From positions 62,001 through 126,000 of IMG/VR virus record IMGVR_UViG_3300046092_000062: 64,000 bases of DNA; one strand, given 5' to 3'. Positions 754 through 14,407 of this stretch are shown one piece after another (position 1 is the stretch's first letter; the number at the start of each line of letters is the position of its first letter). Under the pieces are notes generated by a model, which was not told the origin of the DNA, made no database searches, and saw only the letters and a list, made by a program, of their open reading frames with translations. The translations under genes were made by a program, and so were the position numbers.

Positions 754-1094
754 TGCACAAAATCTACGTTGATGTTCCGTACGAGTACAACTATGTGTAC
801 CGAGTTGATCATGATGAGTCCACTGGTCCAGAAGTGCTAGCAAGGGACTTTGGGGTAAAGTTTGCGTTTATTTGCAACGCTGCTCAGAGATTCAGCAACC
901 CCGAAGGACTTGGAGCAGTGGGCAATACAGGTGATGCTCACGTGGTATGGCTTGAGTCGGAGAAAGACGAATTGTTCTTTCTAATCAAGTCCGGATTTAC
1001 CAAGTTAAATAAAGATGTAGTTGAACTATTCTTGAAAGCAAGATTGGAAGCTATGCGATTAAAAGAGAGGAATGATTATGAAACGTGTAATTGA
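753..1094 (+). CDS. hypothetical protein
   Basis: 113-aa ORF, TAATG-coupled to upstream gene. Confidence 0.6.
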   Translation: MHKIYVDVPYEYNYVYRVDHDESTGPEVLARDFGVKFAFICNAAQRFSNPEGLGAVGNTGDAHVVWLESEKDELFFLIKSGFTKLNKDVVELFLKARLEAMRLKERNDYETCN

Positions 1095-1749: not shown

Positions 1750-1763
1750 AAAGGAAAATTGAC

Positions 1764-1787
1764 ATGAAACGTTCAGGTAAACGATAG
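1764..1787 (+). promoter_or_regulatory. putative 7-codon leader peptide MKRSGKR-TAG followed by two hairpins
   Basis: AAGGAA RBS at 1751-1756, ATG 1764, TAG 1785-1787; stem 1787-1795/1815-1823 and stem 1823-1828/1838-1843. Confidence 0.45.
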
Positions 1788-1849
1788 TGTCATCCTAGAC
1801 CCCCGTATGGTCCTGGATGGCACGTAAAAGAAAAATATTTACGATCCAT

Positions 1850-1924
1850 CCACAGCAAACTTTGCTGGCGAAGTACCCGGCTCTTACCCGGACTAACAGA
1901 GTTCGATTCTCTGGCTGTGGACCA
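1850..1924 (+). tRNA. atypical tRNA-Lys(CTT)
   Basis: Acceptor CCACAGC/GCTGTGG + A + CCA; anticodon arm CCGG-ctCTTac-CCGG; canonical T-arm; A8-A9 instead of T8-A9 and odd D-loop. Confidence 0.7.
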
Positions 1925-1927
1925 TAT

Positions 1928-2002
1928 GGGGGTATAACTTAGCGGCTAAAGTATCTGGCTTTTAACCAGAGAACCAGAGTTCGATTCTCTGTGCCCCTAC
2001 CA
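1928..2002 (+). tRNA. tRNA-Lys(TTT)
   Basis: TCTGG-ctTTTaa-CCAGA anticodon arm, T-arm, CCA. Confidence 0.92.
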
Positions 2003-2127
2003 TATCAAAGTACGCTAGTGCATTATAGTGAATCAGGTCGCTCCTGTGGAAGCTAAAACTGCATCAATTGCCCTGGAGGGAAAGGTCGACGGCTGCGGTT
2101 CGATTCCGTAGCGTACTTTGATATGGT
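1999..2127 (+). ncRNA. long-stem tRNA-like element A
   Basis: Perfect 19-bp inverted repeat 1999-2017/2109-2127 with T-arm GCGG-TTCGATT-CCGT abutting the 3' strand. Confidence 0.55.
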
Positions 2128-2134
2128 AAGGCAT

Positions 2135-2212
2135 GGAAGTATAGCTCAGTTGGTTTAGAGCATCGGACTTTTAATCCGAGGGTCCTGGGTTCGAGCCCCA
2201 GTGCTTCTACCA
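2135..2212 (+). tRNA. tRNA-Lys(TTT), second copy
   Basis: TCGGA-ctTTTaa-TCCGA anticodon arm, T-arm, CCA. Confidence 0.92.
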
Positions 2213-2282
2213 TATGCAAACACATTTTTCTGAACGCCAGTCATTTGCCGTGCAGAGTAGGTCAAGTGTGTTTACATATGGT
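2209..2282 (+). ncRNA. long-stem element B
   Basis: 19-position stem 2209-2227/2264-2282 with one C.A mismatch. Confidence 0.5.
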
Positions 2283-2412
2283 ACTAGAAGGAGTAATTAA
2301 CCTTCGCCATAATCGGGAGTCATGACCCGATGAACTCGTAGTCTTCTAATTGGTTAGGAAAGGCCCGTTATGGGGCTTAATGTTGGTTCGAGCCCAACCT
2401 ACAATGAGTTCG

Positions 2413-2509
2413 CATATATAAACATACTAGTCGGCGACTAAGCGTATTGCACGGTCTCTACGGAGTGAAAGGGTCAGTGGTTCGATTCCACATAGTGTGT
2501 TTTTATATG
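2413..2509 (+). ncRNA. long-stem tRNA-like element C
   Basis: CATATA-T-AAACATACTA / TAGTGTGTTT-T-TATATG stem with T-arm GTGG-TTCGATT-CCAC. Confidence 0.5.
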
Positions 2510-2642
2510 GTGCAAAAGTAATAAAGGGACTTGGGTGCCCAGAGTTTTGAAAACTCACACACTATAGTCGGCATGTGTGTCCACCGTGCATTAACCGACG
2601 TTTAAATAAAGCTAGGGCAAGCGCCAGTTAACGGTGGAGCCT

Positions 2643-2756
2643 ATATAGAAGTATTCTTGGCATAAGTCAAAGCGGGAGAAGAAGCCTAGTATCTGCAGAT
2701 GCGAAAGTTTCAGAGCTTGACTCCTCCTATGCTTGCATTTGAGAGTGCTTCTATAT
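2643..2756 (+). ncRNA. long-stem element D
   Basis: 16-bp stem 2643-2658/2741-2756 (3 G-U) followed by GGTA like elements A and B. Confidence 0.4.
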
Positions 2757-2857
2757 GGTATAGTGTAATGCGAATGCACGGGATCGCCACATAAGCCTTT
2801 GACGAGCGGTGGAACAAGGTTCAGGTGTGGTAGGAACCCACAATGCCATTTAAATTT

Positions 2858-2933
2858 GCCTTTATAGCTCAGTTGGTAGAGCAGAGGATTGAAAATCCTT
2901 GTGTCACTGGTTCGAATCCGGTTAGAGGCACCA
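2858..2933 (+). tRNA. tRNA-Phe(GAA)
   Basis: Canonical cloverleaf, ttGAAaa loop, CCA. Confidence 0.95.
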
Positions 2934-2948
2934 AATTATAGGAGTAGT

Positions 2949-4172
2949 ATGGCAAAGTTTTCGGAGAAGTTCTTCTGTCCTGCACCGTGGACAATGTTAT
3001 ACTATCATGCCAACTCTCCTAGTCCGTGCCACATGATTAAAAATTTAGAGATGGAAGCGACCCCATCTGAATATTTTAATAGCGAATGGCTTAAGAATAT
3101 AAAACAAGAAATGCAGCAAGGGATTGTTCCTGCTGCATGTTCTGGTTGTAAAGAGCGTGAGAGTCATGGACTAAAAAGCACACGCGGCGCTATTTGGAAT
3201 TACTATAATGTAGGACCTGAGCCCGAGTACGAAGATCAATGGTTCGCAAACAAGTTTACCGCAGACAGCCCAACCGTTCCAAAAAGAATTGAGCTTAGGT
3301 TTAGTAATCTATGTAATATGAAATGCAGGATGTGCGACGAAACATCTAGTTCCAGCTTTGCAGCAGAAAAAATTGAACATAAGATTAAACCAGACAAAAA
3401 CGGAAGTCATCTTGAGCATAGCGTGATACCCATCACAAAGATAGAAAACAATTCAATTGATGGCCTCATGGATACTGCCTTTCTAGCGTCAGTTCGAAAG
3501 GTATGTTTAACCGGTGGCGAACCATTTTTAATAAAAGAATATTACAGCTATCTAGATTACTTAATAGACAACGGTTTTAACAAAACACTAGACGTAGAAT
3601 TGTTTACAAATTGCAGTGTATATAATCCATTGTTTATTGATCGACTTAGTAAATTTAAAACAGTTCAAATGGTGATGAGCATCGATGCTGTGGGCAAAGC
3701 GGCTGAATATATTCGTAGTGGAACCGATTGGCCTAAAGTGGAAGCCAATGTGCTTCGACTAAATCAACTAGCAGCTCCATTTAAAATGGAAGTTACAACT
3801 GCCATATCTGCATACAGCCTAATGGACTTTGCAGAGACTGCACGATTTCTAATGAGGTTGTACACCGAAAACAACACCATTGGCGTAAAATGTTACAACG
3901 TAACTTCGCCTCCGGGTATGCACTTTAATAATCTGCCTAAGCCGTTGAGAATACAAGCAATAGATCAAATCGACAAGGCAGTAGAGATTCTAACAGCACC
4001 AAACTATTTGGTACTAGTTACAGAGTTGTTAAACGTGAAACACGCATTGACTACTTCGTCCCCGGATACACCACTGGCATTCTTTGACTATACTAAGAAG
4101 TACGACACCATTAGGGGAGAGTCGTTTGCGGAAGTGTTTTTAACATCTCCTGACAGCACAGATTACTTGTAA
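2949..4172 (+). CDS. radical SAM protein with Cys-rich (twitch/SPASM-like) N-terminus
   Basis: CNMKCRMC (CxxxCxxC), LTGGEPF motif; start moved to ATG 2949 after GGAG. Confidence 0.88.
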   Translation: MAKFSEKFFCPAPWTMLYYHANSPSPCHMIKNLEMEATPSEYFNSEWLKNIKQEMQQGIVPAACSGCKERESHGLKSTRGAIWNYYNVGPEPEYEDQWFANKFTADSPTVPKRIELRFSNLCNMKCRMCDETSSSSFAAEKIEHKIKPDKNGSHLEHSVIPITKIENNSIDGLMDTAFLASVRKVCLTGGEPFLIKEYYSYLDYLIDNGFNKTLDVELFTNCSVYNPLFIDRLSKFKTVQMVMSIDAVGKAAEYIRSGTDWPKVEANVLRLNQLAAPFKMEVTTAISAYSLMDFAETARFLMRLYTENNTIGVKCYNVTSPPGMHFNNLPKPLRIQAIDQIDKAVEILTAPNYLVLVTELLNVKHALTTSSPDTPLAFFDYTKKYDTIRGESFAEVFLTSPDSTDYL

Positions 4173-5161
4173 AGGTTGGCCACATACACAATATGGTCAA
4201 TGGGGTGGTCTTTCCAATTATACACTGCTGGTAGATGATGTTTAATCTCCATAATTACAAACGCTTGCAGCAATGAATGGCTTCGTAGAAAATCTGTTAA
4301 CTTATAGGTTTTTCTAAATTGTTCAATTTCGCTAAACCATTGTAAGTTTTGCTGGGCATCAATGTATGTTTGGTGGAATGACTTTGTGTAACTAGTATCA
4401 AATGTGCCAGCCCCGATAGAGTTAACAAAATTGTCGAACCAAGTGGGAAATCGATCGCTAACAATATCAGTTAACGAGATCTGGTACAGGTGATCTATTC
4501 GGTCTTTGGGTAGTACATAGGTTTGTTCGTTAACTTCATGCCCGTTGTGTTGATTCCGTACACGATACCATTCAGAATACCATTCCAGCCCGCCGGATAA
4601 CTTATCATAGTCGATGCCTCTAAGGAATGGGAAAATTTCGTAATACGATTCAACAAACAAATTCCGCGCCTCAATAGAGTCTTGACAATTAAAACTATCA
4701 AACCCAAACCGACGTTCGACTATTTGATTCGCCTTAAAGAAAACAGGCCATTTGGTGATAGTATTTAATGATCCGTATTTGCGATCGTCGAGTACATCGT
4801 TATCATTGATAATAACAATAACTGGATCGGGATCACTTAATAGTATCGATCGGATAGCCATGTCCGGTCTTGACACATCAAAAGATGTTGGTATGTCATG
4901 ACAGTTGAGTAGAAAAACTTTTTTCTCTTTTGGTTGATTGTATGTCATCCAAATTAGATGTTGATGAATACTTTGATGAGTTGGTATTCTTGCGTGTAAG
5001 TGCGCAGTACCTATTCCTCCAAACATCTCACTAACTTCTTTGTTTACTGGATCATCAACGGTTTGACTAGCTGAGTCAATTTCACTTTTGTTGATGCACC
5101 AATGTATATAACTACCCGACGACCCCGGCGGGTATAATAGATAAATGTTCTTTGACAGCAT
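4163..5161 (-). CDS. hypothetical, sulfotransferase-like P-loop N-terminus
   Basis: MLSKNIYLLYPPGSSGSYI; start moved to 5161, TAAATA on minus strand at 5166-5171. Confidence 0.6.
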   Translation of the reverse strand: MLSKNIYLLYPPGSSGSYIHWCINKSEIDSASQTVDDPVNKEVSEMFGGIGTAHLHARIPTHQSIHQHLIWMTYNQPKEKKVFLLNCHDIPTSFDVSRPDMAIRSILLSDPDPVIVIINDNDVLDDRKYGSLNTITKWPVFFKANQIVERRFGFDSFNCQDSIEARNLFVESYYEIFPFLRGIDYDKLSGGLEWYSEWYRVRNQHNGHEVNEQTYVLPKDRIDHLYQISLTDIVSDRFPTWFDNFVNSIGAGTFDTSYTKSFHQTYIDAQQNLQWFSEIEQFRKTYKLTDFLRSHSLLQAFVIMEIKHHLPAVYNWKDHPIDHIVYVANLYK

Positions 5162-5182
5162 GGAATATTTATTGAAATAAAT

Positions 5183-5256
5183 GCTCTTATAGGTAAATGG
5201 TATATCGGCGCTGTGGTATAGCGCAGTCCTAAGTTCGATTCTTAGTAGGAGCACCA
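5183..5256 (+). tRNA. tRNA-Thr(GGT)
   Basis: Acceptor GCTCTTA/TAGGAGC, anticodon arm GCGCT-gtGGTat-AGCGC (unusual G32), CCA. Confidence 0.82.
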
Positions 5257-5271
5257 CGTGATAAGTATCTA

Positions 5272-6183
5272 ATGCAACATAATTTTTTACCATGTAAATA
5301 TCCAATTATTTGTGCCCCGATGAATAGAGTGTCGGACGTTAAGCTAGCACTTGCAGTTCATAGAGCTGGGTGCTTGCCGAGCCTTGTGGTCCACAATCAT
5401 GATGAATCTGAATTAGCTAACGATGTGGCTAAGATTGTGAACGAAATGAAAGAGTTCACAGAGCTGTCGGGATCAAGCGATTTTATACTTGCACTTAGAT
5501 CAGATTTTTTATTAAAAGATACCAAGCTGCTCCCTGCGATGTTAAAGTACAGGCCTGCGTATGTTGAATTCTTTGACAATATTGATTGGTCTGACATAAA
5601 GGTGGTCAACCTTATTAAGCTGCTTAGAACATACAGAATTAAAATAATCTATAAAATACTTGCACCTAGAATATTGGGCAAGTTAGTGGAATTTGTTGAC
5701 GCTATTGACGTTAAGGGCCCTGATGCCGCTGCCCGTGTGAATACCACAACTACTACTAGTTTAGTAGATCGGATTAAGCAACTGAAATCCGCTAATCCAC
5801 ATTTGCACATTATTGCATCTGGTGGTATGTCATCGCAACAGGATGTGCAGGCATGTATTGACGCTGGCGCAAGTGCAGTGGCATTGGGCACAGTATTTGC
5901 CATGTCAGAAGAGTCGTCGATTTCAGTTGAGACAAAAATGAAAATGATTGAATCAACATTCTCACAAGTTGTGAACATTGGCGAAGCCCAACAAAATGCG
6001 TTAGTGTTTACAAACGAAAAAGATGTTGACGGCAACCACACTGTGGGACTAGAACTTGGTATAAAAAGCCCAGTCGCTGGTCATGTGTTTGTGGGGAAAG
6101 CAATTGATTCAATTGACTCAATTAAAACAGTGGAAACAATCGTGTCGGAGCTAACTGGGGTAACTGATGCAAAAACCCGATGA
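5272..6183 (+). CDS. nitronate monooxygenase / FabK-like FMN TIM-barrel oxidoreductase
   Basis: YPIICAPM N-terminus, IIASGGM and AVALGTVF FMN-binding motifs. Confidence 0.75.
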   Translation: MQHNFLPCKYPIICAPMNRVSDVKLALAVHRAGCLPSLVVHNHDESELANDVAKIVNEMKEFTELSGSSDFILALRSDFLLKDTKLLPAMLKYRPAYVEFFDNIDWSDIKVVNLIKLLRTYRIKIIYKILAPRILGKLVEFVDAIDVKGPDAAARVNTTTTTSLVDRIKQLKSANPHLHIIASGGMSSQQDVQACIDAGASAVALGTVFAMSEESSISVETKMKMIESTFSQVVNIGEAQQNALVFTNEKDVDGNHTVGLELGIKSPVAGHVFVGKAIDSIDSIKTVETIVSELTGVTDAKTR

Positions 6184-7006
6184 TGTAACTATTTGTTACT
6201 TCGGGGGCAGCGGCGGCTTCTTTTGCTTGTACCTTCTTTTGCTTAGTAACCAATACCAATGCTGCTTCGAAAATGGGTCAGCTGACGCACACGTAACAAA
6301 AGTTACGCAATGGGATATACAGAATGTTTCCAATTGGAAAGATAATGAGATATGGCCTAACAACAGCAACACCAAAGCAGAGAGTTTCGATGTTAGCAAA
6401 GTCTTTTTTCTTTGTAACCCATTGCAATTAACGCAAAAGCCCGGAGTGCAAGATGACGTGCTATCTAAATGTCCAGGAAAGAAAATTCTATTGTACACAG
6501 ATTTAGAAACACAATGGCATCTAACAAAAACTAAACGTGCCTACTGGTTTCAAAAAGGACAGCAGCTAAACGGACAAGGACCAAGTTGGCAGACAGCCGA
6601 ATATCGTGAAGAACAAGTGCTAATATGGTATAATAACATCAGACAGGATAGCTGGCCTCAAATCTCCAAGGCAGATGATTTTTACAATCTTCCGCAGGAA
6701 ATACAGGATATTTGTATAACTGACTATAGCATGTGGGAAGTCCTTGACATTGGCAAATTTGACAATGATGACTACCGACCCCGTGGAGTAGAGTTTAGGG
6801 GAGACATAGTGTACAAGAAAGTAGTGGACATTATGCCTAAGATGGACATAGTGGTTAAGCTACAAGATTTGATTAAAACACAAGGCCGTGTGTTGTTCGA
6901 CCAGCTTGGTATTGAGACAAACAAAGACACGCAAAAGTTCATAATCCAGTACCTGTCGTTGCACACAGTCGAGCAGCGGAAATTCCTATTAGGCAAGCAC
7001 ATATAA
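6167..7006 (+). CDS. hypothetical, sulfotransferase-like P-loop N-terminus
   Basis: ICYFGGSGGFF; 279 aa. Confidence 0.55.
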   Translation: MQKPDDVTICYFGGSGGFFCLYLLLLSNQYQCCFENGSADAHVTKVTQWDIQNVSNWKDNEIWPNNSNTKAESFDVSKVFFLCNPLQLTQKPGVQDDVLSKCPGKKILLYTDLETQWHLTKTKRAYWFQKGQQLNGQGPSWQTAEYREEQVLIWYNNIRQDSWPQISKADDFYNLPQEIQDICITDYSMWEVLDIGKFDNDDYRPRGVEFRGDIVYKKVVDIMPKMDIVVKLQDLIKTQGRVLFDQLGIETNKDTQKFIIQYLSLHTVEQRKFLLGKHI

Positions 7007-7031
7007 TCAATTTGGCAACCAACTCATAATT

Positions 7032-8240
7032 ATGATTAATTTAAAACTAGGATATTACTCATGCAACGGAGTCACGTTCGATTCTAAGATTGCTGCATGT
7101 GTGTATTCTGTGCAGCACAATAACGCATTAGTTACGTGGACATTCAACGACCGAGAGTTTAATCAGCACAACTGGACACAAGAACCTGACCTAACACTGG
7201 ATCAATTGTATGATATTAGATCAAAGCAGCTAAGAGATCAGTACGACTATGTTATATTGAGCTACAGCGGCGGCGCCGACAGTCACAATATCCTAATGAG
7301 CTTTATTCGTCAAGGCCTCCATATAGACGAGATTGTGGTAAACACAACTGAGAAAGCTAGTGCAAGATTCACAGAGTTAGATAAAAACAATCTTGACCCC
7401 CGCAATGCAGGAGCAGAGCATGTGTTTCAGACGTTGCCTAGACTACGTGAAATTCAGGGATTGATCCCTAAAACAAAGATTAGTGTGTTGGATTTGTCGG
7501 ATCATCTATTTGAGAGTTTTTCAAAAGCCGATGATGCTAGCTGGGTATTAGAAAAGCGCGAAAGCCTAAACCCAGCTGGAGTAACACGGTTTAATTATCT
7601 GCACTTTGATCAATTGCGCAAACAGTTTGATAAAGATAAAAAAATTGCATTAGTGCTAGGAATCGAAAAGCCCAGGGTGTTTATTAGACACGGACAGTTG
7701 GTACTACGGTTTACAGACCGTGCGGCCAACATTGTTACTGTAGCAGAACACGTTAAAGAATACACAAATAGCACAGTAGAATTCTTCTACTGGAGTCCAG
7801 ATGCAGTGCCAGTGGTTATCAAACAAGCGCACACTATCAAGCGATGGCTTGAGGCTAATCCAGACAAACAGCATCTCTGGGACGTTGACACACTAACACC
7901 GGAGATGGTGAGACTAGTGCATGAGCGAGTGTACAGACCACTGCTATACACTACGTGGGACAACAGTTGGTGGCAATCAAACAAAGCAGTTAACGATTGG
8001 ACAAGCGAGTTTGACCAGTGGTTTAAGGATGGGTACAGTGATACTCGTGCTTACCAAGTGTGGGCAGAGGGTATTGAGTATGTTCGTGAAATTTTGCATC
8101 CTTACATAAACACTACTCATCTTGTTAATGGTCAAGCAGACGGCCTTGACATATTTGTTAAAGAGTACTTAATTGGACCAGTGAAAAATCTTTGTCCAGA
8201 ATTAAAGAATAAACTGTATAGGCATTTGCAAAATAAATAA
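7032..8240 (+). CDS. PP-loop (adenine nucleotide alpha hydrolase) family ATPase
   Basis: ILSYSGGADS PP-loop motif. Confidence 0.78.
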   Translation: MINLKLGYYSCNGVTFDSKIAACVYSVQHNNALVTWTFNDREFNQHNWTQEPDLTLDQLYDIRSKQLRDQYDYVILSYSGGADSHNILMSFIRQGLHIDEIVVNTTEKASARFTELDKNNLDPRNAGAEHVFQTLPRLREIQGLIPKTKISVLDLSDHLFESFSKADDASWVLEKRESLNPAGVTRFNYLHFDQLRKQFDKDKKIALVLGIEKPRVFIRHGQLVLRFTDRAANIVTVAEHVKEYTNSTVEFFYWSPDAVPVVIKQAHTIKRWLEANPDKQHLWDVDTLTPEMVRLVHERVYRPLLYTTWDNSWWQSNKAVNDWTSEFDQWFKDGYSDTRAYQVWAEGIEYVREILHPYINTTHLVNGQADGLDIFVKEYLIGPVKNLCPELKNKLYRHLQNK

Positions 8241-8273
8241 CTAGCGTGTATAATACACAGAAGGGACGATGCA

Positions 8274-8417
8274 ATGAAGTCAAGAGAGACAATCGAAAAG
8301 GCATACGGCAACGTCCCAAAAGAAATTGGGGTCACAGTTGATGTATTTAACTGGGTCCCGGAGTTTAGAGGTGTTAAGTATTACTGGATTCGTGCAGTAA
8401 GATTTTTCACCAGGTAA
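8274..8417 (+). CDS. small hypothetical protein (47 aa, below ORF-track cutoff)
   Basis: MKSRETIEKAYGNVPKEIG...; AAGGGA upstream; fills the gap before tRNA-Ser. Confidence 0.5.
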   Translation: MKSRETIEKAYGNVPKEIGVTVDVFNWVPEFRGVKYYWIRAVRFFTR

Positions 8418-8423
8418 GAATAC

Positions 8424-8514
8424 GGAGTGTGGGCAGGCCGGTAATGCAGCACCCTGCTAAGGTGTAGACTTGTGATGAGCAGGTCATAGGGTTCGATTCC
8501 CTAACACTCCGCCA
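8424..8514 (+). tRNA. tRNA-Ser(GCT)
   Basis: Long variable arm, ctGCTaa loop, G73-CCA. Confidence 0.93.
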
Positions 8515-8532
8515 GTGATAAGTAAGTATAAT

Positions 8533-8608
8533 GCGGATGTAGCTCAGCTGGTAGAGCACAACGTTGCCAACGTCGAGGTCGTCGGTTCGAACCCGATCAT
8601 CCGCTCCA
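8533..8608 (+). tRNA. tRNA-Gly(GCC)
   Basis: GCGGATG acceptor, ttGCCaa loop, T73-CCA. Confidence 0.95.
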
Positions 8609-8613
8609 TAAAT

Positions 8614-8690
8614 GGCTCTCTAGTTCCAATTGGCAGAACATCGGATTCCAAATCCGAGTGTTGGGGGTTCGAATCCCTCGGGGGTCGCCA
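8614..8690 (+). tRNA. tRNA-Trp(CCA)
   Basis: TCGGA-ttCCAaa-TCCGA arm, G73-CCA; D-stem GTTC/GAAC. Confidence 0.93.
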
Positions 8691-8695
8691 ATATA

Positions 8696-9145
8696 ATGAA
8701 ATCAAAATTCTCCGATTCCCAATTACGCACAATCACGAAAGTGGTTACATACCGCGTGATTATCACATGTAGTCACATCATCAATGGGTTTATTGTTAGT
8801 GGTAGTCTTGCTCTTGGATTGCAAATTGCAGGCCTAGCAGCAGTAATTAACAGTTTGTTATTTTGGCTACACGAGCGCATGTGGAATAGGCTACAATGGA
8901 AACGTCTCCATTTAAACAGTTCTACGTTCGTAGAAACCAATCCTAGAAGCATCAGTAAGATATTAACTTGGCGCATTTTCTCAATGTCTAGTAATTTTCT
9001 CATCCCTTACTTGATAACTGGATCATGGGGATCAGCAGCGGCATTCCTTGGGATAGCAGTAATAGTTAACATGGCTCTATACTATCTACATGAACGAGTG
9101 TGGAACATAGTTAAGTGGGGTAAACAGGTCAACGGCCTTTGGTGA
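8696..9145 (+). CDS. membrane protein with two tandem DUF2061-like repeats
   Basis: RTITKVVTYR...LHERMWNRLQW and RSISKILTWR...LHERVWNIVKW; start moved to ATG 8696. Confidence 0.72.
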   Translation: MKSKFSDSQLRTITKVVTYRVIITCSHIINGFIVSGSLALGLQIAGLAAVINSLLFWLHERMWNRLQWKRLHLNSSTFVETNPRSISKILTWRIFSMSSNFLIPYLITGSWGSAAAFLGIAVIVNMALYYLHERVWNIVKWGKQVNGLW

Positions 9146-9207
9146 AATGGATATCATATCTGTCTTCGAAACAGATGGTGGGAGTTCGATCCTCTCAAGG
9201 CCGACCA
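9133..9207 (+). tRNA. tRNA-Arg(TCG)
   Basis: CGGCCTT/AAGGCCG acceptor, TCTGT-ctTCGaa-ACAGA arm, CCA; overlaps last 13 nt of upstream CDS. Confidence 0.88.
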
Positions 9208-9213
9208 AAATAG

Positions 9214-9242
9214 TTGACTTAGTCAACGGCAGTGTGTATAAT
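9214..9242 (+). promoter_or_regulatory. sigma70 promoter
   Basis: TTGACT-17 nt-TATAAT. Confidence 0.75.
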
Positions 9243-9266
9243 ACAAACTGTTCATAAAAGAGTTAG

Positions 9267-9454
9267 CCATGAGCAAGGCAGCTTTCTGTTACCAGTGGTA
9301 GGCGTAGTATCAATAATCTTGCAATTAGTGGCCTGTGTTTAAGTATCGGGAACCCCCGAGGCAACAAAACGATTTTAAAATTGAGAACCGTTTCGAGCCC
9401 ACAACGTGTGGTCTAGGTAGGCATTCGCAAGATGCTGCTTGATCTAGATCATGG
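9267..9454 (+). ncRNA. unidentified structured ncRNA (about 190 nt)
   Basis: Nested stems 9267-9272/9449-9454, 9274-9282/9434-9441, 9316-9322/9427-9433, 9331-9335/9418-9422 plus internal hairpins; no ORF; own promoter. Confidence 0.5.
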
Positions 9455-9469
9455 TTGCCCATCTGATCA

Positions 9470-10105
9470 ATGGGGACCAAGTGGTCCGCGGTTGAAAAAC
9501 AGAATTACATGGCTAACCCTTTTATGAATACATTAACGTTTCAGACCCCGGTACGTATAGTTAATAACTGGGATAAAACCACACAAGTAGCAAAGCACTG
9601 CATCGATCTAGTAAAGAGTCAATCGGCCAGTATCACTAGGGAATACAAGTACAGCGATTACGGATATCACTATGAACTAGGATCAACTGGCACAGTTAGT
9701 CACATCACTAACGGTAGTGCAGAATGGTATTCAGTGACTGGTAAGCTAATAGAATCTACCATGCGCTTTTTGCCGCTAATGCTAGATGACCTAGCAGACC
9801 TTGACCCTACGTTTGCTAGCATTAACTACATGGTGGGCAATGGCGCAGAGCATAGGGATCACGAAAGTCAGCAAACTGGGTTCAATTATTTTTTTGCTGA
9901 TTGTGACAGCACTACCTACGCAAGAAACGCAGACATCTGCGAATCCTATCCTAGCGTAAAAGACACAGGGTGGATCCTTGATATCCAACAACTACACAGC
10001 ATCTCAAATACAAACGAACGCATTTGGTTTAACCTTAGATTTGGTAAACCCTTTGCATATTGCAGAGATTGGTTTGCAGATCATTTGGTATTAACTTATG
10101 AATAA
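9470..10105 (+). CDS. hypothetical, possible 2OG-Fe(II)/cupin oxygenase
   Basis: HRD...LHS facial-triad-like spacing. Confidence 0.5.
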   Translation: MGTKWSAVEKQNYMANPFMNTLTFQTPVRIVNNWDKTTQVAKHCIDLVKSQSASITREYKYSDYGYHYELGSTGTVSHITNGSAEWYSVTGKLIESTMRFLPLMLDDLADLDPTFASINYMVGNGAEHRDHESQQTGFNYFFADCDSTTYARNADICESYPSVKDTGWILDIQQLHSISNTNERIWFNLRFGKPFAYCRDWFADHLVLTYE

Positions 10106-11273
10106 AATTATCTCAATTGAGCCTGCAATCGATCCAGTCAATCGTCCTACATTTTTGTTGGACTGGGAACTAACAATGAAGTGCAATTTGGATTGCGACT
10201 ACTGCTCGACTGGCATTGAGTACGGTGGTCACGACAACAGCACAGCACATCCTCCTAAAGACGAATGCTTAAAAACCATTGACTTCATGTTTGCTTATGC
10301 AGACAAGTACATGCAGCTAAAGCCCAAATGGCAGCGCATGGTGGTTCTCAATGTATACGGCGGCGAAAGTATATTTCATCCAGACATTGTTGAGATCCTA
10401 GAGCAGGTGCGAGCAAGACACACATACGATTGGCCATTGACTGTTACCTGCACAAGTAACGCAGTGGCTGGTAAGAATCTTTGGGAAAAGGTTGCAAACT
10501 TAATTGATGAGTTTACCGTTAGTTTTCACAGCAGTGCATTGCCTAAACAGAGACAGCAAGTACTAGACAACATACTTTATAATAAGGCTATCGGCAGGCG
10601 CCAAAAGGTGGTGTTTGTGATGCACAACGATCCTGTTTTGTGGGATATTAGCCAACAAGCTATTGAGTTTTGTAAAACACACGATGTTAGGTATGTAGTT
10701 AAAGCAAACGACACCCCTACACCTCAGTGGCAGTATAACAAAGAACAGTTTATTTACTTTCAAGATTACTACAAGTCACGCACACCAGCTAAGAGTAGGG
10801 ATGCTCTAACAAAGGCGCTGGATGCAGTGGAAACTGACACAGTTGGCATGGGTAAGGTCGGTCGAGGTTGTTGTGGTGGCCGAAAGCTATGCACTAACCA
10901 AGACCTACAACACCCAACAGCCTTTGTACCACATGCAGATTTCATGGGTTGGAGTTGCAGTGTTAACTGGTACTTCTTGTACATTAAACAGATCAATGGC
11001 GATGTGTACACAAACAAGGATTGCCGTATGCGCTTTGATGGTACAGTTGGTCCAATTGGTAATTTGTCAAATGGTAATCTTATACTAGAACAAGTGCAGA
11101 AAAACATTGACAACAAAGCCATGCCTGTTATACAATGTGCTAGAACAAGATGTATATGCGGTTACTGTGCTCCAAAAGCGCAAGACCCAAAAGATTTTGA
11201 AGCTATTATGGATAAACACATAGTTGACAAGCAAGTCAAATTTGTTTATAATAACAGCTTAGATGATAAGTAA
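10098..11273 (+). CDS. radical SAM protein with Cys-rich C-terminus
   Basis: CNLDCDYC, YGGES; C-terminal CCGG..C, CSV, CARTRCICGYC. Confidence 0.88.
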   Translation: MNKIISIEPAIDPVNRPTFLLDWELTMKCNLDCDYCSTGIEYGGHDNSTAHPPKDECLKTIDFMFAYADKYMQLKPKWQRMVVLNVYGGESIFHPDIVEILEQVRARHTYDWPLTVTCTSNAVAGKNLWEKVANLIDEFTVSFHSSALPKQRQQVLDNILYNKAIGRRQKVVFVMHNDPVLWDISQQAIEFCKTHDVRYVVKANDTPTPQWQYNKEQFIYFQDYYKSRTPAKSRDALTKALDAVETDTVGMGKVGRGCCGGRKLCTNQDLQHPTAFVPHADFMGWSCSVNWYFLYIKQINGDVYTNKDCRMRFDGTVGPIGNLSNGNLILEQVQKNIDNKAMPVIQCARTRCICGYCAPKAQDPKDFEAIMDKHIVDKQVKFVYNNSLDDK

Positions 11274-11284
11274 TTTATCACAAT

Positions 11285-11368
11285 GCGTAAGTGGTGGAAT
11301 GGTATACACTCTGGTCTTAGAAGCCAGCGCCGCGAGGATTGAGAGTTCGAGTCTCTCCTTACGCACCA
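11285..11368 (+). tRNA. tRNA-Leu(TAG)
   Basis: Variable arm, ctTAGaa loop, A73-CCA. Confidence 0.93.
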
Positions 11369-11398
11369 TTTATTATTTTAAGTTTTTCTAAAAAGTGC

Positions 11399-11464
11399 TT
11401 GACACTTAATGAAACTCTTGTTATAATAGATACATGTTAAGAAATTAACAAACGTTCTTTAAAA
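11399..11464 (+). promoter_or_regulatory. consensus sigma70 promoter plus boxA-like antitermination site
   Basis: TTGACA(11399)-17-TATAAT(11422); CGTTCTTTAAAA at 11453-11464 resembles rrn boxA TGCTCTTTAACA. Confidence 0.8.
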
Positions 11465-11465
11465 A

Positions 11466-11750
11466 TTTGTTTTGATGTAAAGTAAGCAGGCGTACCACGC
11501 TAATAGGTTGCGTGACTCTTGTCGAAAATTTGGTCCAGATAGAAAGCTGGGAACTCTTGAGTAGTCTGTAAGCGGCTACTGTGGCGTCTAACACCTATGA
11601 GTTAGAAACGATCTGTTCCACGTAGCAATACGCAGGAAGAATGATTGCAATAGAGTAGAGTAACGCTCTACCGGTTGCATGAGGGTCAACTGAAAGACGC
11701 AAGTCTTACCCGTTACCTTGTAACCAGGTAAAAAGAGGCATCAAAATAAA
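11466..11750 (+). ncRNA. unidentified multi-hairpin ncRNA (285 nt)
   Basis: 12-bp closing stem 11466-11477/11739-11750; at least 6 internal hairpins, several with GNRA loops; no ORF. Confidence 0.6.
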
Positions 11751-11764
11751 TTTCTAAATAACTG

Positions 11765-11838
11765 TTGACAGCAAATGAAAAGTTTGCTACAATAGCAGCT
11801 TAGTTAGACATTGTGCTAACTAACAAAGTTCTTTAAAA
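11765..11838 (+). promoter_or_regulatory. sigma70 promoter plus boxA-like site
   Basis: TTGACA(11765)-17-TACAAT(11788); AGTTCTTTAAAA at 11827-11838. Confidence 0.8.
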
Positions 11839-11855
11839 TAGATACGTATAAGAAG

Positions 11856-11970
11856 TTCTTATACACATGCACATAAATGCGTAGGCCACGCAGATATGGT
11901 TGGATTCATAGCTTGGGCTATTGCCCAGGTTGGCAGGTTCGAAACCTGTGAGTGTGCAGTTGTATAAGAA
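11856..11970 (+). ncRNA. long-stem tRNA-like element E
   Basis: TTCTTATACA/TGTATAAGAA and TGCACAT/GTGTGCA stems, T-arm GCAGG-TTCGAAA-CCTGT, D-like and variable-like hairpins, no CCA. Confidence 0.5.
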
Positions 11971-11974
11971 TTTA

Positions 11975-12875
11975 GGGCAGTTTAATGTCCTGCAAAGAGT
12001 ATGGTTCGCCCAGCTTGATGCGAAGAATAACTGTGGTGACACAGCCAAAGGAGGTATGCCTACATAACTCCGCTAGCAATAGTTCATTTAGACAAGCCTG
12101 CTCACTCCTGTGAGGGAGCGTTCACTCAGCGACGGGTGGATGTAACAGTGACGCAAAGTGCATAGGGAAGAACGTTTGCTTACAAGCCTGAGATTGCATC
12201 AAGGGGAACTTGAGTAGATGGAAAGTAACAGGTGGTGCTGACTTCTATGCGAAACCAACTTTGTTAATTGGTATGAGAAAGGGTAGTGTATTGGTTCGAA
12301 GGGTTGCACCTAAGAGCTCGTATGCAGTTTTAGTGGTTGGTGGACGTAGTAATACGAACATTGGTCGCAAAAGACGACTGAGTAGCTCGCAAGGCAAAAG
12401 GTACGTGGTGTGTTGTATTGTGTATTCCAAAAGATTATGCAGCAACTGAGTCAGCACATCGCAGTAGGTTGATATAGTTCATTGGTAGAACATCTGTCTC
12501 TTAAACAGAATGCGGTGGGTTCAATTCCCACTATCATTACAAAACGCAAAGACTGACTCGGTCGTATGTGAAAAGCATCTAATACTTGAGCCGCAAGGTA
12601 ATCAAGTCAGACGTAACTCGCAAGGTGAAATCTGTTTATGCAGGAAGTTTCGTAGCTACTTAGCGGTGGTGAATGGCTCTAAAGGTCAACGGGATAGAAA
12701 GCGTAGAATAGCATACGGCGACAAGACTACTGCCTGTCTTTAAAAACGGCGATGCTGACAGCAGACTAGACTACTATGCAAATAGGGTTTAGTGGAAGTC
12801 GGAAGAAAGTAGACTCGCAAGGTTTACAATAATGTCCGAGGTGTTGTTAGGTTAGGATGTATTCTCAGTCCGCCA
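11975..12875 (+). ncRNA. probable GOLLD large ncRNA (about 900 nt)
   Basis: ORF-free, GNRA (GCAA/GAAA) hairpin-rich, inside a phage tRNA cluster; segments such as GAAAGTAACAGGTGGTGCTGAC and 3' TATTCTCAG match my recollection of GOLLD; ends approximate. Confidence 0.65.
12468..12539 (+). tRNA. tRNA-Lys(CTT)-like module embedded in the large ncRNA, no CCA
   Basis: D-arm GTTC-attggta-GAAC, anticodon arm TCTGT-ctCTTaa-ACAGA, T-arm GTGGG-TTCAATT-CCCAC; weak acceptor, ends ACAA. Confidence 0.7.
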
Positions 12876-12969
12876 ACTTATATGCAAACACATTAGTAAA
12901 AGTCTGTAAAAGGACGAAGCAACTGACTCTGTAATAGGAGCTGTTTGCTCAGTGTGTTTACATATAAGT
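12876..12969 (+). ncRNA. long-stem element F
   Basis: ACTTATATG-C-AAACACATT / AGTGTGTTT-A-CATATAAGT, nearly the same stem as element B. Confidence 0.55.
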
Positions 12970-13056
12970 ATGCTTTGATGGTTAAAGTTGGATAGGTAGT
13001 GGGTAGCTTGTGAAATCATAGTAGCAAGTCCACAGCAACCCAAACGGTAGAAGCAG

Positions 13057-13129
13057 CTTATTTGAAAGCACATTTGTTCCTGAAAGATTTTACGGTTTGG
13101 ATGGTTCAGCAAATGTGTTTCCAAATAAG
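13057..13129 (+). ncRNA. long-stem element G
   Basis: CTTATTTG-A-AAGCACATTTG / CAAATGTGTTT-C-CAAATAAG. Confidence 0.5.
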
Positions 13130-13224
13130 AATTTGGTGATTGTGTGGAGCTAAGGCGATTCGCTGGACTATGAAGCACGACGAGAGCGTTGAACTTGAAA
13201 TAGGTTCAACCACCAGACTAATAT

Positions 13225-13300
13225 GGACGGTTGGCAGAGCGTTTATGCGCCGGATTGCAAACTCGGTATAAGGTAGGTTAGACTCCTACACCGTCCTCCA
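13225..13300 (+). tRNA. tRNA-Cys(GCA)
   Basis: ttGCAaa loop, T73-CCA; non-canonical T-loop TTAGACT. Confidence 0.85.
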
Positions 13301-13595
13301 TTTTTGCTAGTTTTTTAAAACTAGTTGTGACGTATGGAGATGAGAGATTGCACCTCTAGTTAGCACTTGACACGCTTACTGGAATATTAATCGTGATCCA
13401 GTGACCCGAGTCCCCTGGCTTAATTGCCTTGTTTGTTGACTCTCGGAAATATTGGTATCCTCTGCTTGTTGTATTTTGCTTTAGAAAACAGTTGCCTTGA
13501 AAATCAATTATATCTAATGTACATTGCACATTGTCCCGCAATTGACTTGCCATACGTTGCACCCCTATTAAAATCAAACAGAAAGGAACTCGATT

Positions 13596-14162
13596 ATGAA
13601 ATTTACACTTCGCAAAGCAAACGCCCTACAAAACACAATCCAGGAACACATCAAGACGATCGACATCGCATTGACGGTTTCCCTTAACGAGTTCCAAAGT
13701 TCAACTTCGGTGCTTGGTACCGCACGTGAGACATTGGTCCGCAACGATGCCAAGCGCACACAGTTGACCAAGGCCTTGTACGCAGTCCGTGCAAAGGTTG
13801 GTCGCGCCAACACAGAAGCCGGTGTTGCAGATCTGTTGACAGACGCTGCATTCATTGACAAGCGTTTGGGCTTCTTAAAAGGCCTAACTGAAAGCAAGGT
13901 TGTCGAAGAAATCGCAGTCATTGAAGGCAAGCTAGAAAAGCTTCGCGCACAAGACAACAAGAACCGTGTTTACGGTTACAACGACACAGTTGACACTGGT
14001 GTGCTTGAAGCGGACCAGATTGAAGGTTACAAGGCAGAAATGCGTGACCTGAAGAAACAAAAGCAAAGCATTAATGACAAGGTCCTGGAACTTAACGTTC
14101 GCACCGAGATTGAGTTGGATGCAGATACCGTTTCTTTGCTACAGGCAGAGCAACTGGTATAA
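13596..14162 (+). CDS. hypothetical coiled-coil protein
   Basis: 188-aa ORF, AAAGGA RBS, strong codon bias. Confidence 0.75.
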   Translation: MKFTLRKANALQNTIQEHIKTIDIALTVSLNEFQSSTSVLGTARETLVRNDAKRTQLTKALYAVRAKVGRANTEAGVADLLTDAAFIDKRLGFLKGLTESKVVEEIAVIEGKLEKLRAQDNKNRVYGYNDTVDTGVLEADQIEGYKAEMRDLKKQKQSINDKVLELNVRTEIELDADTVSLLQAEQLV

Positions 14163-14169
14163 ATATTGA

Positions 14170-14244
14170 AGCAGAGTAGAGAAATGGTATCTCACCAGGC
14201 TCATAACCTGGAGACAGTTGGTTCGATTCCAGCCTTTGCATCCA
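14170..14244 (+). tRNA. tRNA-Met(CAT), initiator-like
   Basis: CCAGG-ctCATaa-CCTGG arm; 1:72 mismatch (A.A); CCA. Confidence 0.85.
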
Positions 14245-14250
14245 ATACAT

Positions 14251-14325
14251 GCCTTGATAGCTCAGGGGTAGAGCGTCTCCTTTACACGGAGAGGGTCCGC
14301 GGTTCGAAACCGTGTCAAGGTACCA
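14251..14325 (+). tRNA. tRNA-Val(TAC)
   Basis: TCTCC-ttTACac-GGAGA arm, CCA. Confidence 0.93.
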
Positions 14326-14333
14326 AAGGAAAT

Positions 14334-14407
14334 GCGGGATTAGTTTAATGGTAAAACGAGATCCTTCCAAGTTCAAGTCAGCGGTTCGATTCCGCTATCC
14401 CGCTCCA
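14334..14407 (+). tRNA. tRNA-Gly(TCC)
   Basis: GCGGGAT/ATCCCGC acceptor, T73-CCA, ctTCCaa loop (weak anticodon stem). Confidence 0.88.

What the first reader, a model, noticed from the sequence alone, without database searches (positions are those of the whole stretch)
8614..8690. Phage tRNA-Trp has the Hirsh-suppressor D-stem and could read the RF1 UGA
Seen: D-stem GTTC/GAAC, giving U11-A24 (T8624, A8638), with one extra D-loop C. Known: E. coli tRNA-Trp is GUUC/GAGC and the G24A Hirsh variant increases UGA decoding. Inference: the phage supplies its own near-cognate UGA reader, completing a circuit with the RF1 gene. Caveat: A24 is natural in many tRNA-Trp (e.g. B. subtilis). No TCA-anticodon tRNA is present in this window.
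Basis: partly seen in the sequence, partly recalled or inferred. Interest (0 to 1): 0.62.

Follow-up and report, generated by a model that had tools for sequence, protein, structure and literature searches.

The report
Phage tRNA-Trp and a UGA-interrupted RF1
The flagged gene is a normal phage tryptophan tRNA whose "suppressor-like" base pair is common in its phage group, but it sits near a release-factor gene with a strictly conserved internal UGA stop at a tryptophan position, which some tryptophan tRNA must read through.

Summary
Window 8614-8690 is a real tRNA-Trp(CCA) with D-stem GUUC/GAAC (U11-A24) and one extra D-loop base. No UCA tRNA exists in the window or in the whole 320.8-kb jumbo-phage genome.

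The phage's RF1 gene (1072-1749) lacks domain 1 and has an in-frame TGA (1183-1185) where RF1 has Trp.
- The TGA is kept in 149/149 informative rows of two overlapping scans of related viral contigs, and in bacterial homologues.
- The two other conserved Trp codons are always TGG.
- In the window's clade a covarying hairpin starts 8 nt downstream.
- TGA is otherwise a normal stop (31% of ORFs).

A tRNA-Trp is therefore the likeliest decoder.

A24 cannot be shown to be a specific adaptation.
- U11-A24 is the clade's usual state (16/19) and occurs in 10/60 sampled bacterial tRNA-Trp.
- Two (near-)complete relatives with the same TGA showed only G24 tRNA-Trp.
- The bacterial genomes with homologues carry C11-G24 tRNA-Trp.

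Relatives do show other UGA-reading features: unpaired 27:43 in 8/19, and tRNA(UCA) in a TGA-recoded 524-kb relative.

Verdict: an ordinary tRNA and a plausible near-cognate reader. A specialised "Hirsh" role is unproven.

The parts
8614..8690 (+). tRNA-Trp(CCA), 77 nt with the CCA end encoded; one of two tRNA-Trp copies in the genome
   Evidence: ARAGORN; Rfam RF00005 at 51 bits with the cloverleaf alignment
8623..8626 (+). D-stem 5' strand G10 U11 U12 C13 (U11 = 8624)
   Evidence: Sequence; Rfam structure line
8636..8639 (+). D-stem 3' strand G22 A23 A24 C25 (A24 = 8638)
   Evidence: Sequence; Rfam structure line
8641..8657 (+). Anticodon arm: 5-bp stem (U27-A43 paired), loop UUCCAAA with U32, anticodon CCA at 8648-8650
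   Evidence: Sequence; parsed table
1072..1749 (+). Short RF1-type release factor gene: 225 codons, no domain 1, PxT motif = PPT, GGQ present, interrupted by one in-frame TGA
   Evidence: Translation. NCBIfam prfA 192 bits over profile positions 107-334. Pfam PCRF + RF-1. Matches solved RF1 structures at E 5e-41
1183..1185 (+). In-frame TGA (codon 38), aligned to Trp of T. maritima RF1. Conserved in every informative related locus
   Evidence: 79/79; 70/70; 8 bacterial assemblies; alignment; the other Trp codons are always TGG
1193..1254 (+). Conserved RNA hairpin (arms 1193-1211 and 1236-1254) starting 8 nt after the TGA
   Evidence: RNAalifold. Pair counts: 90.7% paired against 26-47% in slid controls; 33 compensatory cells against 9.2+-2.4 in shuffles. 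MFE -27 kcal/mol, z -3.38
4..14407 (+). Window part of the phage tRNA array (16 tRNA genes, all on the + strand), in which both the RF1 gene and this tRNA-Trp lie

Best explanation
The flagged gene is an ordinary, functional tRNA-Trp(CCA). It is one of two copies in the 48-tRNA array of an uncultured freshwater jumbo phage that uses the standard genetic code. Its U11-A24 pair is the state typical of tRNA-Trp in this phage clade, not a demonstrable special adaptation.

The same array holds a domain-1-less RF1 gene whose codon 38 is a strictly conserved UGA at a position where RF1 has Trp.

Shown:
- The UGA and both flanking reading frames are conserved under protein-level selection.
- The other Trp codons of the gene are TGG.
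- In the window's clade a covarying hairpin starts 8 nt downstream of the UGA.
- No UCA tRNA, SelA, SelB or TrpRS is encoded by the phage.

Inferred:
- Full-length RF1 is made by site-specific readthrough in which a near-cognate tRNA-Trp(CCA), from phage or host, inserts Trp in competition with host RF2.
- The main recoding signal lies in the mRNA (never U at the +4 base, plus the hairpin) rather than in a special tRNA.
- RF1 output therefore depends on the ratio of tRNA-Trp decoding to RF2 termination. That would make the gene a low-level or RF2-sensing switch for a factor that terminates at UAA/UAG, which are 70% of this phage's stops.
- The phage tRNA-Trp copies probably contribute to this reading simply by being tRNA-Trp. 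Any extra benefit of A24 is possible but unproven.
For: tRNA identity and D-stem.

RF1 gene and UGA:
- TGA is conserved in 79/79 and 70/70 informative loci of two overlapping viral scans.
- It is also present in bacterial homologues.
- X38 aligns with Trp of RF1.
- The two other Trp codons are TGG in 80/80 distinct genes.
- Codon-position conservation pattern holds on both sides of the TGA.
- No conserved in-frame start codon follows the TGA in alignment A1.

Recoding signal:
- Hairpin covariation and controls.
- The +4 base is A, G or C and never T.

Genetic code and machinery:
- Standard code genome-wide, with stops TAA 228, TGA 108, TAG 17.
- No Pfam domain crosses any other TGA-split ORF pair.
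- No UCA tRNA; no SelB, SelA or class Ib aaRS.

A24 is not required:
- G002's sole tRNA-Trp is U11.G24 with a 5-bp anticodon stem.
- G079's is C11-G24.
- All 8 distinct tRNA-Trp recovered from the bacterial genomes carrying homologues are C11-G24.

Expression and literature:
- Contigs from four freshwater RNA libraries cover the gene including the TGA site, and no change is listed there.
- Over-expressing wild-type tRNA-Trp did not raise UGA readthrough in E. coli, whereas a structural variant did (PMC13092985).
Against: - U11-A24 is much more frequent in this clade's tRNA-Trp (16/19) than in sampled bacteria (10/60).
- 8/19 clade tRNA-Trp also have an unpaired 27:43, against 81/678 of the clade's other tRNAs, 4/60 sampled bacterial tRNA-Trp, and 8.9% of bacterial tRNA-Trp in PMC13092985. 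This may mean the tRNA side is tuned after all.
- No experiment shows readthrough, the residue inserted, or that the protein is made.
- RNA-library contigs cannot prove transcription.
- The hairpin is not evident in the more distant members tested (G077, L227, L213).
- The host, and hence its tRNA-Trp and RF2, are unknown.
Confidence: 0.55

Rival explanations
1. Specialised reader. Phages of this group supply tRNA-Trp variants tuned to read UGA: A24, an unpaired 27:43 (4-bp anticodon stem), C9, or outright a UCA anticodon. Expression of the tRNA array would then switch on the UGA-interrupted RF1. In the window phage, A24 is the tuning feature.
For: - 16/19 distinct clade tRNA-Trp have U11-A24, 8/19 have 27:43 unpaired, and one has C9.
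- Backgrounds are lower: 10/60 U:A and 4/60 unpaired in sampled bacteria; 12% unpaired in the clade's other tRNAs.
- The TGA-recoded relative G077 carries a tRNA(UCA) and the same RF1 TGA.
- G24A, A9C and 27:43 unpairing raise UGA reading by E. coli tRNA-Trp (PMC13092985; PMC11805395).
- The RF1 gene and the tRNA-Trp lie on the same strand of one tRNA array.
Against: - The window's two copies have only A24, with 5-bp stems and A9.
- G002 and G079 keep the TGA with tRNA-Trp lacking all three features.
- Bacterial copies have no dedicated tRNA.
- U:A at 11:24 is also the majority in the clade's Arg, His, Gly and Glu tRNAs, and tRNA-Lys has even more 27:43 mismatches. AT drift of phage tRNAs is therefore an alternative explanation.
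- 108 of 353 phage ORFs end in TGA.
- The counts are not phylogenetically independent.
Confidence: 0.25
2. The UGA is a true terminator and the gene is expressed as two products: a 37-residue peptide, and a C-terminal fragment made by reinitiation or from an internal start. The tRNA-Trp would then be irrelevant.
For: Gene callers and RefSeq annotate it this way: truncated 172-187-aa products, and a split into a 56-aa CDS plus a 'peptide chain release factor-like protein' in Variovorax. The hairpin could serve coupling.
Against: - No conserved ATG, GTG or TTG follows the TGA in the 64-sequence alignment.
- The stop sits exactly at a conserved Trp inside a continuous RF1 domain-2 alignment without a gap.
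- The N-terminal 35-37 codons are conserved as protein in the same frame.
- The strict choice of TGA, never TAA or TAG, in 149 loci is unexplained by simple termination.
Confidence: 0.08
3. The UGA encodes selenocysteine, directed by the downstream hairpin acting as a bacterial SECIS.
For: A UGA followed closely by a conserved hairpin is the bacterial SECIS arrangement.
Against: - Homologous RF1s have Trp, not Cys, at this position.
- The phage has no tRNA-Sec, SelB or SelA.
- No Rfam family matches the site.
- The hairpin apex lies about 38 nt from the UGA with a 24-nt loop.
- The hairpin is absent in distant members that keep the UGA.
Confidence: 0.03
4. The RF1 gene is a decaying pseudogene, or the TGA is an assembly error, so there is nothing for the tRNA to read.
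For: A single in-frame stop in one assembly would normally suggest this.
Against: Identical TGA in 149 informative loci of two overlapping scans, from many samples, at 51-97% protein identity (68-97% to the window's gene, 51-59% to the Gemmobacter query). Purifying selection acts on both sides. Contigs from other studies hold the same site.
Confidence: 0.02

Closest known systems
Hirsh UGA suppressor (E. coli trpT G24A, Su9)
   Same: tRNA-Trp with anticodon CCA and a U11-A24 pair in a GUUC/GA.C D-stem. The D-loop is very like E. coli's.
   Different: Here A24 is the natural, clade-wide state, not a mutation of a U11.G24 tRNA. The rest of the tRNA differs: G1-C72, three G.U pairs in the acceptor stem, U32, an extra D-loop base. 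No functional data exist, and relatives with G24 keep the same RF1 UGA.
4-bp anticodon-stem tRNA-Trp(CCA) that reads UGA (Blastocrithidia-like; PMC13092985)
   Same: Eight of 19 tRNA-Trp of related phages have 27:43 unpaired (C.U, U.U, U.C, G.A), usually together with A24.
   Different: The window's tRNA-Trp has a paired U27-A43 and a 5-bp stem, so it is not of this type.
prfB programmed +1 frameshift at an in-frame UGA (RF2 autoregulation)
   Same: A class-I release factor gene interrupted early by an in-frame UGA in a weak context. Expression requires recoding in competition with RF2.
   Different: There is no frame change: the same frame continues, so this is readthrough, not frameshift. 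The product is RF1-type (PxT) and would not recognise UGA, so control would be cross-regulation by RF2, not autoregulation. The stimulator is a downstream hairpin rather than an upstream SD-like element.
Leaky UGA readthrough by tRNA-Trp in phage Qbeta (A1 protein) and B. subtilis (from my own knowledge, not checked here)
   Same: Near-cognate decoding of UGA as Trp by tRNA-Trp(CCA) gives a low level of an extended product.
   Different: In Qbeta the readthrough extends a complete protein. Here it is needed to make any functional protein, and it restores the ancestral residue.
Code-change module of TGA-recoded Jade phages: RF1 + TrpRS + tRNA(UCA) (Borges et al., bioRxiv 10.1101/2021.08.26.457843)
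   Same: A phage-encoded RF1 linked to UGA decoding. The relative G077 fits this pattern (tRNA(UCA), TGA-recoded genome).
   Different: The window phage uses the standard code and has no UCA tRNA and no TrpRS. In Jade phages the module itself is written in standard code, whereas here the RF1 gene itself carries the UGA.
Bacterial SECIS-directed UGA recoding
   Same: A UGA followed within about 10 nt by a conserved hairpin.
   Different: The position is Trp in homologues, there is no Sec machinery, and the hairpin geometry is different.

Membership tests
tRNA-Trp (bacterial type) | Cloverleaf scoring above the Rfam tRNA threshold | tested here: met
   51 bits against a 29-bit gathering score, with full model coverage 1-71
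tRNA-Trp (bacterial type) | Anticodon CCA and discriminator G73 | tested here: met
   ARAGORN anticodon cca; N73 = G
Hirsh-type UGA-suppressing tRNA-Trp | A at position 24 paired with U11 | tested here: met
   T8624 / A8638; D-stem GTTC/GAAC
Hirsh-type UGA-suppressing tRNA-Trp | Raised UGA decoding relative to the G24 form or to host tRNA-Trp | not testable with these tools
   Needs a reporter assay. Comparative data argue that A24 is not required, because G002 and G079 keep the RF1 TGA with G24 tRNAs
4-bp anticodon-stem tRNA-Trp(CCA) | 27:43 not a standard pair, with a 7-nt loop | tested here: not met
   Window tRNA has U27-A43. The second copy has G27-C43
Opal suppressor tRNA (anticodon UCA) | UCA anticodon | tested here: not met
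   None in the genome. Found only in the relative G077
Peptide chain release factor 1 (prfA) | PxT codon-recognition motif and GGQ motif in PCRF + RF-1 domains | tested here: met
   PPT and GGQ are present in the translation. Pfam PCRF and RF-1 score above their cut-offs. RF1 scores better than RF2: 192 against 118 bits
Peptide chain release factor 1 (prfA) | Full-length architecture with N-terminal domain 1, scoring above the NCBIfam equivalog cut-off | tested here: not met
   The match covers only profile positions 107-334 of 347. 192 bits is below the cut-off of 400, so this is an RF1-type paralogue, not prfA proper
Genome-wide TGA-to-Trp recoding (code 4) | Many genes with in-frame TGA; coding density rises specifically when TGA is read as sense | tested here: not met
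   The gain with TGA as sense is no larger than with TAA as sense. 108/353 ORFs end in TGA. Other TGA-split ORF pairs show no domain across the stop. The same kind of coverage test is positive in the relative G077
Programmed stop-codon readthrough | Conserved in-frame stop with coding constraint on both sides | tested here: met
Programmed stop-codon readthrough | Conserved stimulatory context or structure 3' of the stop | tested here: met
   Covarying hairpin in 64 distinct sequences, and the +4 base is never T. The hairpin is not evident in three distant members
Programmed stop-codon readthrough | Full-length product actually made | not testable with these tools
   Only RNA-library contigs over the site are available
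Selenoprotein gene (bacterial) | Sec machinery present and Cys/Sec at the homologous position | tested here: not met
   No SelA, SelB or tRNA-Sec. Homologues have Trp at this position

The most novel reading that the evidence does not exclude
The short RF1 with UGA at codon 38 is a recoding switch shared by hundreds of freshwater jumbo phages and by bacterial chromosomes and megaplasmids. Its output would be set by the balance between UGA-reading tRNA-Trp and host RF2. The phages would tune the tRNA side of that balance with A24, 4-bp anticodon stems, C9 or a UCA anticodon. The flagged A24 tRNA-Trp would then be the window phage's version of a phage-supplied UGA reader that licenses RF1 synthesis.
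Probability: 0.25. Interest if true: 0.8.

Novelty: new variant of a known kind. Interest (0 to 1): 0.5.

Why it matters
Taken alone, the tRNA is ordinary. What matters is its partner.

- **A second recoded release factor.** A release-factor gene whose own synthesis needs readthrough of UGA would be a second natural case, after prfB, of a release factor controlled by recoding. Here the mechanism is readthrough at a Trp position, helped by a downstream RNA hairpin, which is rare in bacterial systems.
- **Breadth.** It is conserved across more than 250 viral contigs and several proteobacterial genomes. Current annotation splits or truncates it.
- **A bridge to code change.** It links standard-code phages to TGA-recoded relatives that carry tRNA(UCA). 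It may therefore show an intermediate step in how phages move towards stop-codon reassignment.
- **Natural test material.** It offers natural tRNA-Trp variants (A24, unpaired 27:43) for testing ideas on near-cognate UGA decoding.

Tried and rejected
- **Genome-wide recoding of TGA or TAG in the window phage:** rejected.
- **Close cultured relatives:** none in the INPHARED phage collection by DNA. By protein the best hit is 43% identity, mostly canonical prfA or contaminating fragments.
- **Host identification:**
  - MAG hits to the RF1 gene are short contigs in inconsistent taxa (Crocinitomicaceae, Burkholderiales, Pseudobdellovibrionaceae), so they give no host.
Two evenly drawn bacterial samples were used as background instead. 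Other phyla were not sampled.
- **Full-length 222-225-aa homologues in the protein database:** these looked like TGG versions but are TGA read as Trp by the gene callers.
- **Selenocysteine:** no machinery found.
- **Phage TrpRS:** none.
- **Literature:** searches found phage RF1/RF2, and RF-1 in tRNA arrays, but no description of the in-frame UGA. One search timed out. The library lacks most subscription papers, so absence is weak evidence.
- **A trade-off between hairpin and specialised tRNA:** suggested by G077 but not borne out, because relatives with 4-bp-stem tRNAs keep the hairpin.
- It was redone from the stored files.
- **Not attempted:** structure and complex prediction, because they would not bear on the question.

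Full report
**Where the window lies.** The window is bases 62001-126000 of a 320,767-bp IMG/VR virus record, 92% complete by CheckV, with GC 43.8%. Near-identical DNA occurs in freshwater metagenomes of at least 13 other studies, and in wetland and wastewater samples. No cultured phage is close. The genome carries 48 tRNA genes, nearly all in one array at genome 54-76 kb. The first 14.4 kb of the window is the right half of that array: 16 tRNAs, all on the + strand.

**Checking the observation.**
- ARAGORN and Rfam both call a tRNA-Trp(CCA) at 8614-8690.
- The Rfam alignment shows a four-pair D-stem GUUC/GAAC without any non-standard pair.
- The D-loop has one more base than in the relative L020's otherwise similar tRNA-Trp, giving 77 nt against 76.
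- Anticodon stem: five pairs (U27-A43). Position 9 is A, the discriminator is G73, and position 32 is U.
- No UCA tRNA exists in the window, in the genome, or in the 80 related loci of the first scan.
- A second tRNA-Trp(CCA) with the same D-stem lies just outside the window at genome 55960-56036.

**The RF1 gene that the finding leans on.**
- A single RF-1 domain gene lies at window 1072-1749.
- Its frame reads 37 codons, then TGA (1183-1185), then 187 codons.
- Read with X at the stop, it matches prfA better than prfB (192 against 118 bits), but only over profile positions 107-334. It lacks domain 1 and falls below the equivalog cut-off.
- PCRF and RF-1 domains, a PPT (PxT) motif and GGQ are present.
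- In the alignment to T. maritima RF1 the X falls exactly on a Trp, without a gap.

**The TGA is conserved and position-specific.**
- A scan of IMG/VR found 316 related stretches. In the 80 loci kept (68-97% protein identity), 79 of 79 informative ones have TGA at this codon.
- A second scan, seeded from a bacterial homologue, gave 70 of 70. The two scans overlap: some contigs appear in both.
- The full-length 222-225-aa proteins in the protein database exist only because callers read TGA as Trp.
- The two other conserved Trp codons of the gene are TGG in 80 of 80 distinct sequences.
- On both sides of the TGA, codon positions 1 and 2 are conserved and position 3 varies. Both parts are therefore under protein-level selection in one frame.
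- No conserved in-frame start codon follows the stop.
- The base after TGA is A, G or C, never T. U at this position is the base reported to reduce readthrough (PMC5289835, abstract seen).

**A hairpin downstream.** Synonymous positions just after the TGA are unusually conserved.
- RNAalifold predicts a long hairpin.
- With arms at alignment columns 26-44 and 69-87 (window 1193-1211 and 1236-1254), 90.7% of cells pair, against 26-47% when the partner strand is slid.
- 33 cells show compensatory double changes, against 9.2 +- 2.4 in shuffles; 0 of 500 shuffles reach the observed value.
- The window's copy folds at -27 kcal/mol, z = -3.38.
- The hairpin starts 8 nt after the UGA.
- More distant homologues each have some stable hairpin close to the UGA in different sequence. 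Three distant viral members, including G077, show no significant structure.

**The phage uses the standard code.**
- Reading TGA as sense lengthens ORFs no more than reading TAA as sense does.
- Of 353 well-scoring ORFs, 228 end in TAA, 108 in TGA and 17 in TAG.
- The four other same-frame ORF pairs split by a TGA show no Pfam domain across the stop.
- The phage encodes no SelB, SelA, tRNA-Sec or TrpRS.

The RF1 UGA is therefore a single, site-specific recoding event. The only plausible decoders on hand are tRNA-Trp(CCA) molecules from the phage or the host.

**Is A24 special? Background.** I built a covariance model from 18 tRNA-Trp of the clade and collected tRNA-Trp from evenly drawn genomes.

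| Source | C:G at 11:24 | U:A | U.G | Other | 27:43 unpaired |
|---|---|---|---|---|---|
| Pseudomonadota sample (30) | 24 | 3 | 3 | 0 | 3 |
| Bacteroidota sample (30) | 22 | 7 | 0 | 1 | 1 |
| Phage clade tRNA-Trp (19 distinct) | 1 | 16 | 1 | 1 | 8 |
| Phage clade, all other tRNAs (678) | 295 | 256 | 11 | 116 | 81 |

- U11-A24 is thus a natural minority state in bacteria and the rule in this clade's tRNA-Trp.
- U:A is also the majority in the clade's Arg, His, Gly and Glu tRNAs. AT-richness of phage tRNAs could explain part of the excess.
- One relative has C9.
- PMC13092985 reports 4-bp stems in 8.9% of 38,615 bacterial tRNA-Trp. It also shows that a 27:43-unpaired E. coli tRNA-Trp raises UGA readthrough about 2.5-fold, whereas over-expressed wild type does not.
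- G24A and A9C are the classical changes that raise UGA reading.

**Is A24 needed for the RF1 UGA?** No.

| Genome | tRNA-Trp found |
|---|---|
| G001 (354 kb) | two A24 copies |
| G003 (235 kb) | one A24 copy |
| G004 (223 kb) | one copy, A24 plus unpaired 27:43 |
| G002 (364 kb) | a single copy with U11.G24, A27-U43 and A9: the E. coli wild-type pattern |
| G079 (350 kb, 97% complete) | C11-G24 with a 5-bp stem |

All of these keep the RF1 TGA.

The same short RF1 with the same GGN-TGA occurs in bacterial assemblies: Gemmobacter caeni, Jiella, Thalassospira, Rhodovibrio, Sphingomonas/Sphingobium MAGs, a Pseudobdellovibrionaceae MAG, and Variovorax megaplasmids.
- In Gemmobacter it lies in a 19-tRNA array whose tRNA-Trp is C11-G24.
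- In Jiella it is chromosomal, beside ispH, a phosphotransferase and rnhA, with no tRNA within 6 kb.
- All eight distinct tRNA-Trp recovered from these bacterial genomes are C11-G24.
- RefSeq splits the Variovorax gene at the TGA into a 56-aa hypothetical protein and a 'peptide chain release factor-like protein'.

**A relative that does supply a UGA reader.** G077 is a complete 523,836-bp phage with the same RF1 TGA.
- Its best hit to the tRNA-Trp model is a tRNA with anticodon UCA, G73 and an unpaired C27.A43.
- No tRNA-Trp(CCA) was seen among the hits and samples examined.
- In nine 20-kb samples, ORF coverage rises from 0.44-0.94 to 0.65-0.98 when TGA is read as sense, far more than for TAG or TAA. 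G077 is therefore TGA-recoded.
- Even there the two other Trp codons of RF1 are TGG.
- Its RF1 lacks the hairpin.

This resembles the RF1 + tRNA(UCA) 'code-change module' described for Jade phages. The difference is that here the RF1 gene itself carries the UGA.

**Expression.** Contigs from four freshwater RNA libraries (four studies) cover the RF1 gene across 1183-1185, and no change is listed at those positions. These are contigs and may include DNA carry-over. They show presence in RNA libraries and no sign of editing, but they do not prove transcription.

**Interpretation.**
- *Most likely (0.55).* The flagged tRNA is an ordinary phage tRNA-Trp. The RF1 gene is expressed by site-specific UGA readthrough as Trp in competition with host RF2. 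The mRNA context and hairpin are the main signal, and any tRNA-Trp can act as reader. Because RF1 reads UAA and UAG (70% of this phage's stops) and RF2 reads UGA, the site would couple RF1 supply inversely to RF2 activity, or simply hold it low. That step is inference.
The enrichment of A24 and of 4-bp stems, and G077's UCA tRNA, speak for it. G002, G079, the bacterial copies and the 108 TGA-terminated phage ORFs speak against its being necessary.
- *Unlikely.* Two-piece expression (0.08), selenocysteine (0.03) and pseudogene or assembly error (0.02).

**Comparison with what is known.** The tRNA meets the sequence criterion of the Hirsh suppressor (A24 with U11), but the functional criterion cannot be tested here. 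It does not meet the 4-bp-stem criterion or the UCA criterion. The RF gene is RF1-type but is not prfA proper. The recoding resembles prfB in logic (an early in-frame UGA in a release-factor gene) but differs in mechanism (readthrough, a downstream hairpin, cross-regulation rather than self-regulation). In the library I could search I found phage RF1/RF2 genes, and RF-1 in tRNA arrays, but no account of this in-frame UGA.

**Verdict.** The tRNA itself is ordinary. The interest lies in the conserved UGA-plus-hairpin in the neighbouring RF1 gene, and in the unusual spread of UGA-reading features among the clade's tRNA-Trp genes.

Noticed in passing
window 12405-12871: A GOLLD RNA (Rfam RF02032, 198.8 bits, full length) sits in the tRNA array and encloses tRNA-Lys(CTT) at 12468-12540.
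   Followed up: no
outside the window: genome 187515-187589 (locus L297): A tRNA with anticodon CUA (amber suppressor type, labelled 'Pyl' by ARAGORN) lies far from the main array. It is conserved in relatives G001, G002 and G004. TAG ends only 17 of 353 ORFs. The phage thus carries both an amber-reading tRNA and an RF1. Its amino-acid identity and any in-frame TAG genes were not examined.
   Followed up: partly
relative G077 (loci L215, L272, L284-L292): A complete 523,836-bp relative is TGA-recoded over much of its length and carries a tRNA(UCA), yet three of nine sampled 20-kb regions are already dense under the standard code. This looks like the early-standard / late-recoded layout described for other recoded phages.
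   Followed up: partly
loci L094, L096-L102, L267 (bacterial assemblies and megaplasmids): The short RF1 with the same in-frame TGA is also present in Alpha- and Betaproteobacteria, on a chromosome, in a tRNA array or on a megaplasmid. RefSeq annotates it as two separate CDSs in Variovorax.
   Followed up: partly
related loci L077, L006, L015, L033, L043, L047, L060, L068; also L274: Many tRNA-Trp(CCA) of related phages have an unpaired 27:43 (4-bp anticodon stem), mostly together with A24. L005 has C at position 9.
   Followed up: yes
window 178-753, 2889-4172, 5272-6183, 10098-11273: Protein genes interspersed in the tRNA array: a dual-specificity-phosphatase-like ORF directly upstream of the RF1 gene, two radical-SAM proteins, and an FMN TIM-barrel (NMO/IMPDH/DHO-dehydrogenase-like) protein. 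They may be tRNA- or RNA-modifying enzymes. This was not examined.
   Followed up: no
outside the window: genome 180876-181270: ARAGORN reports a permuted tmRNA with tag peptide ANDEQFLMVA. It was not checked with Rfam.
   Followed up: no
relative G002 (locus L087): ARAGORN lists a tRNA with a four-base anticodon call '(tttc)', i.e. an 8-nt anticodon loop, in the array of the 364-kb relative. It was not examined.
   Followed up: no
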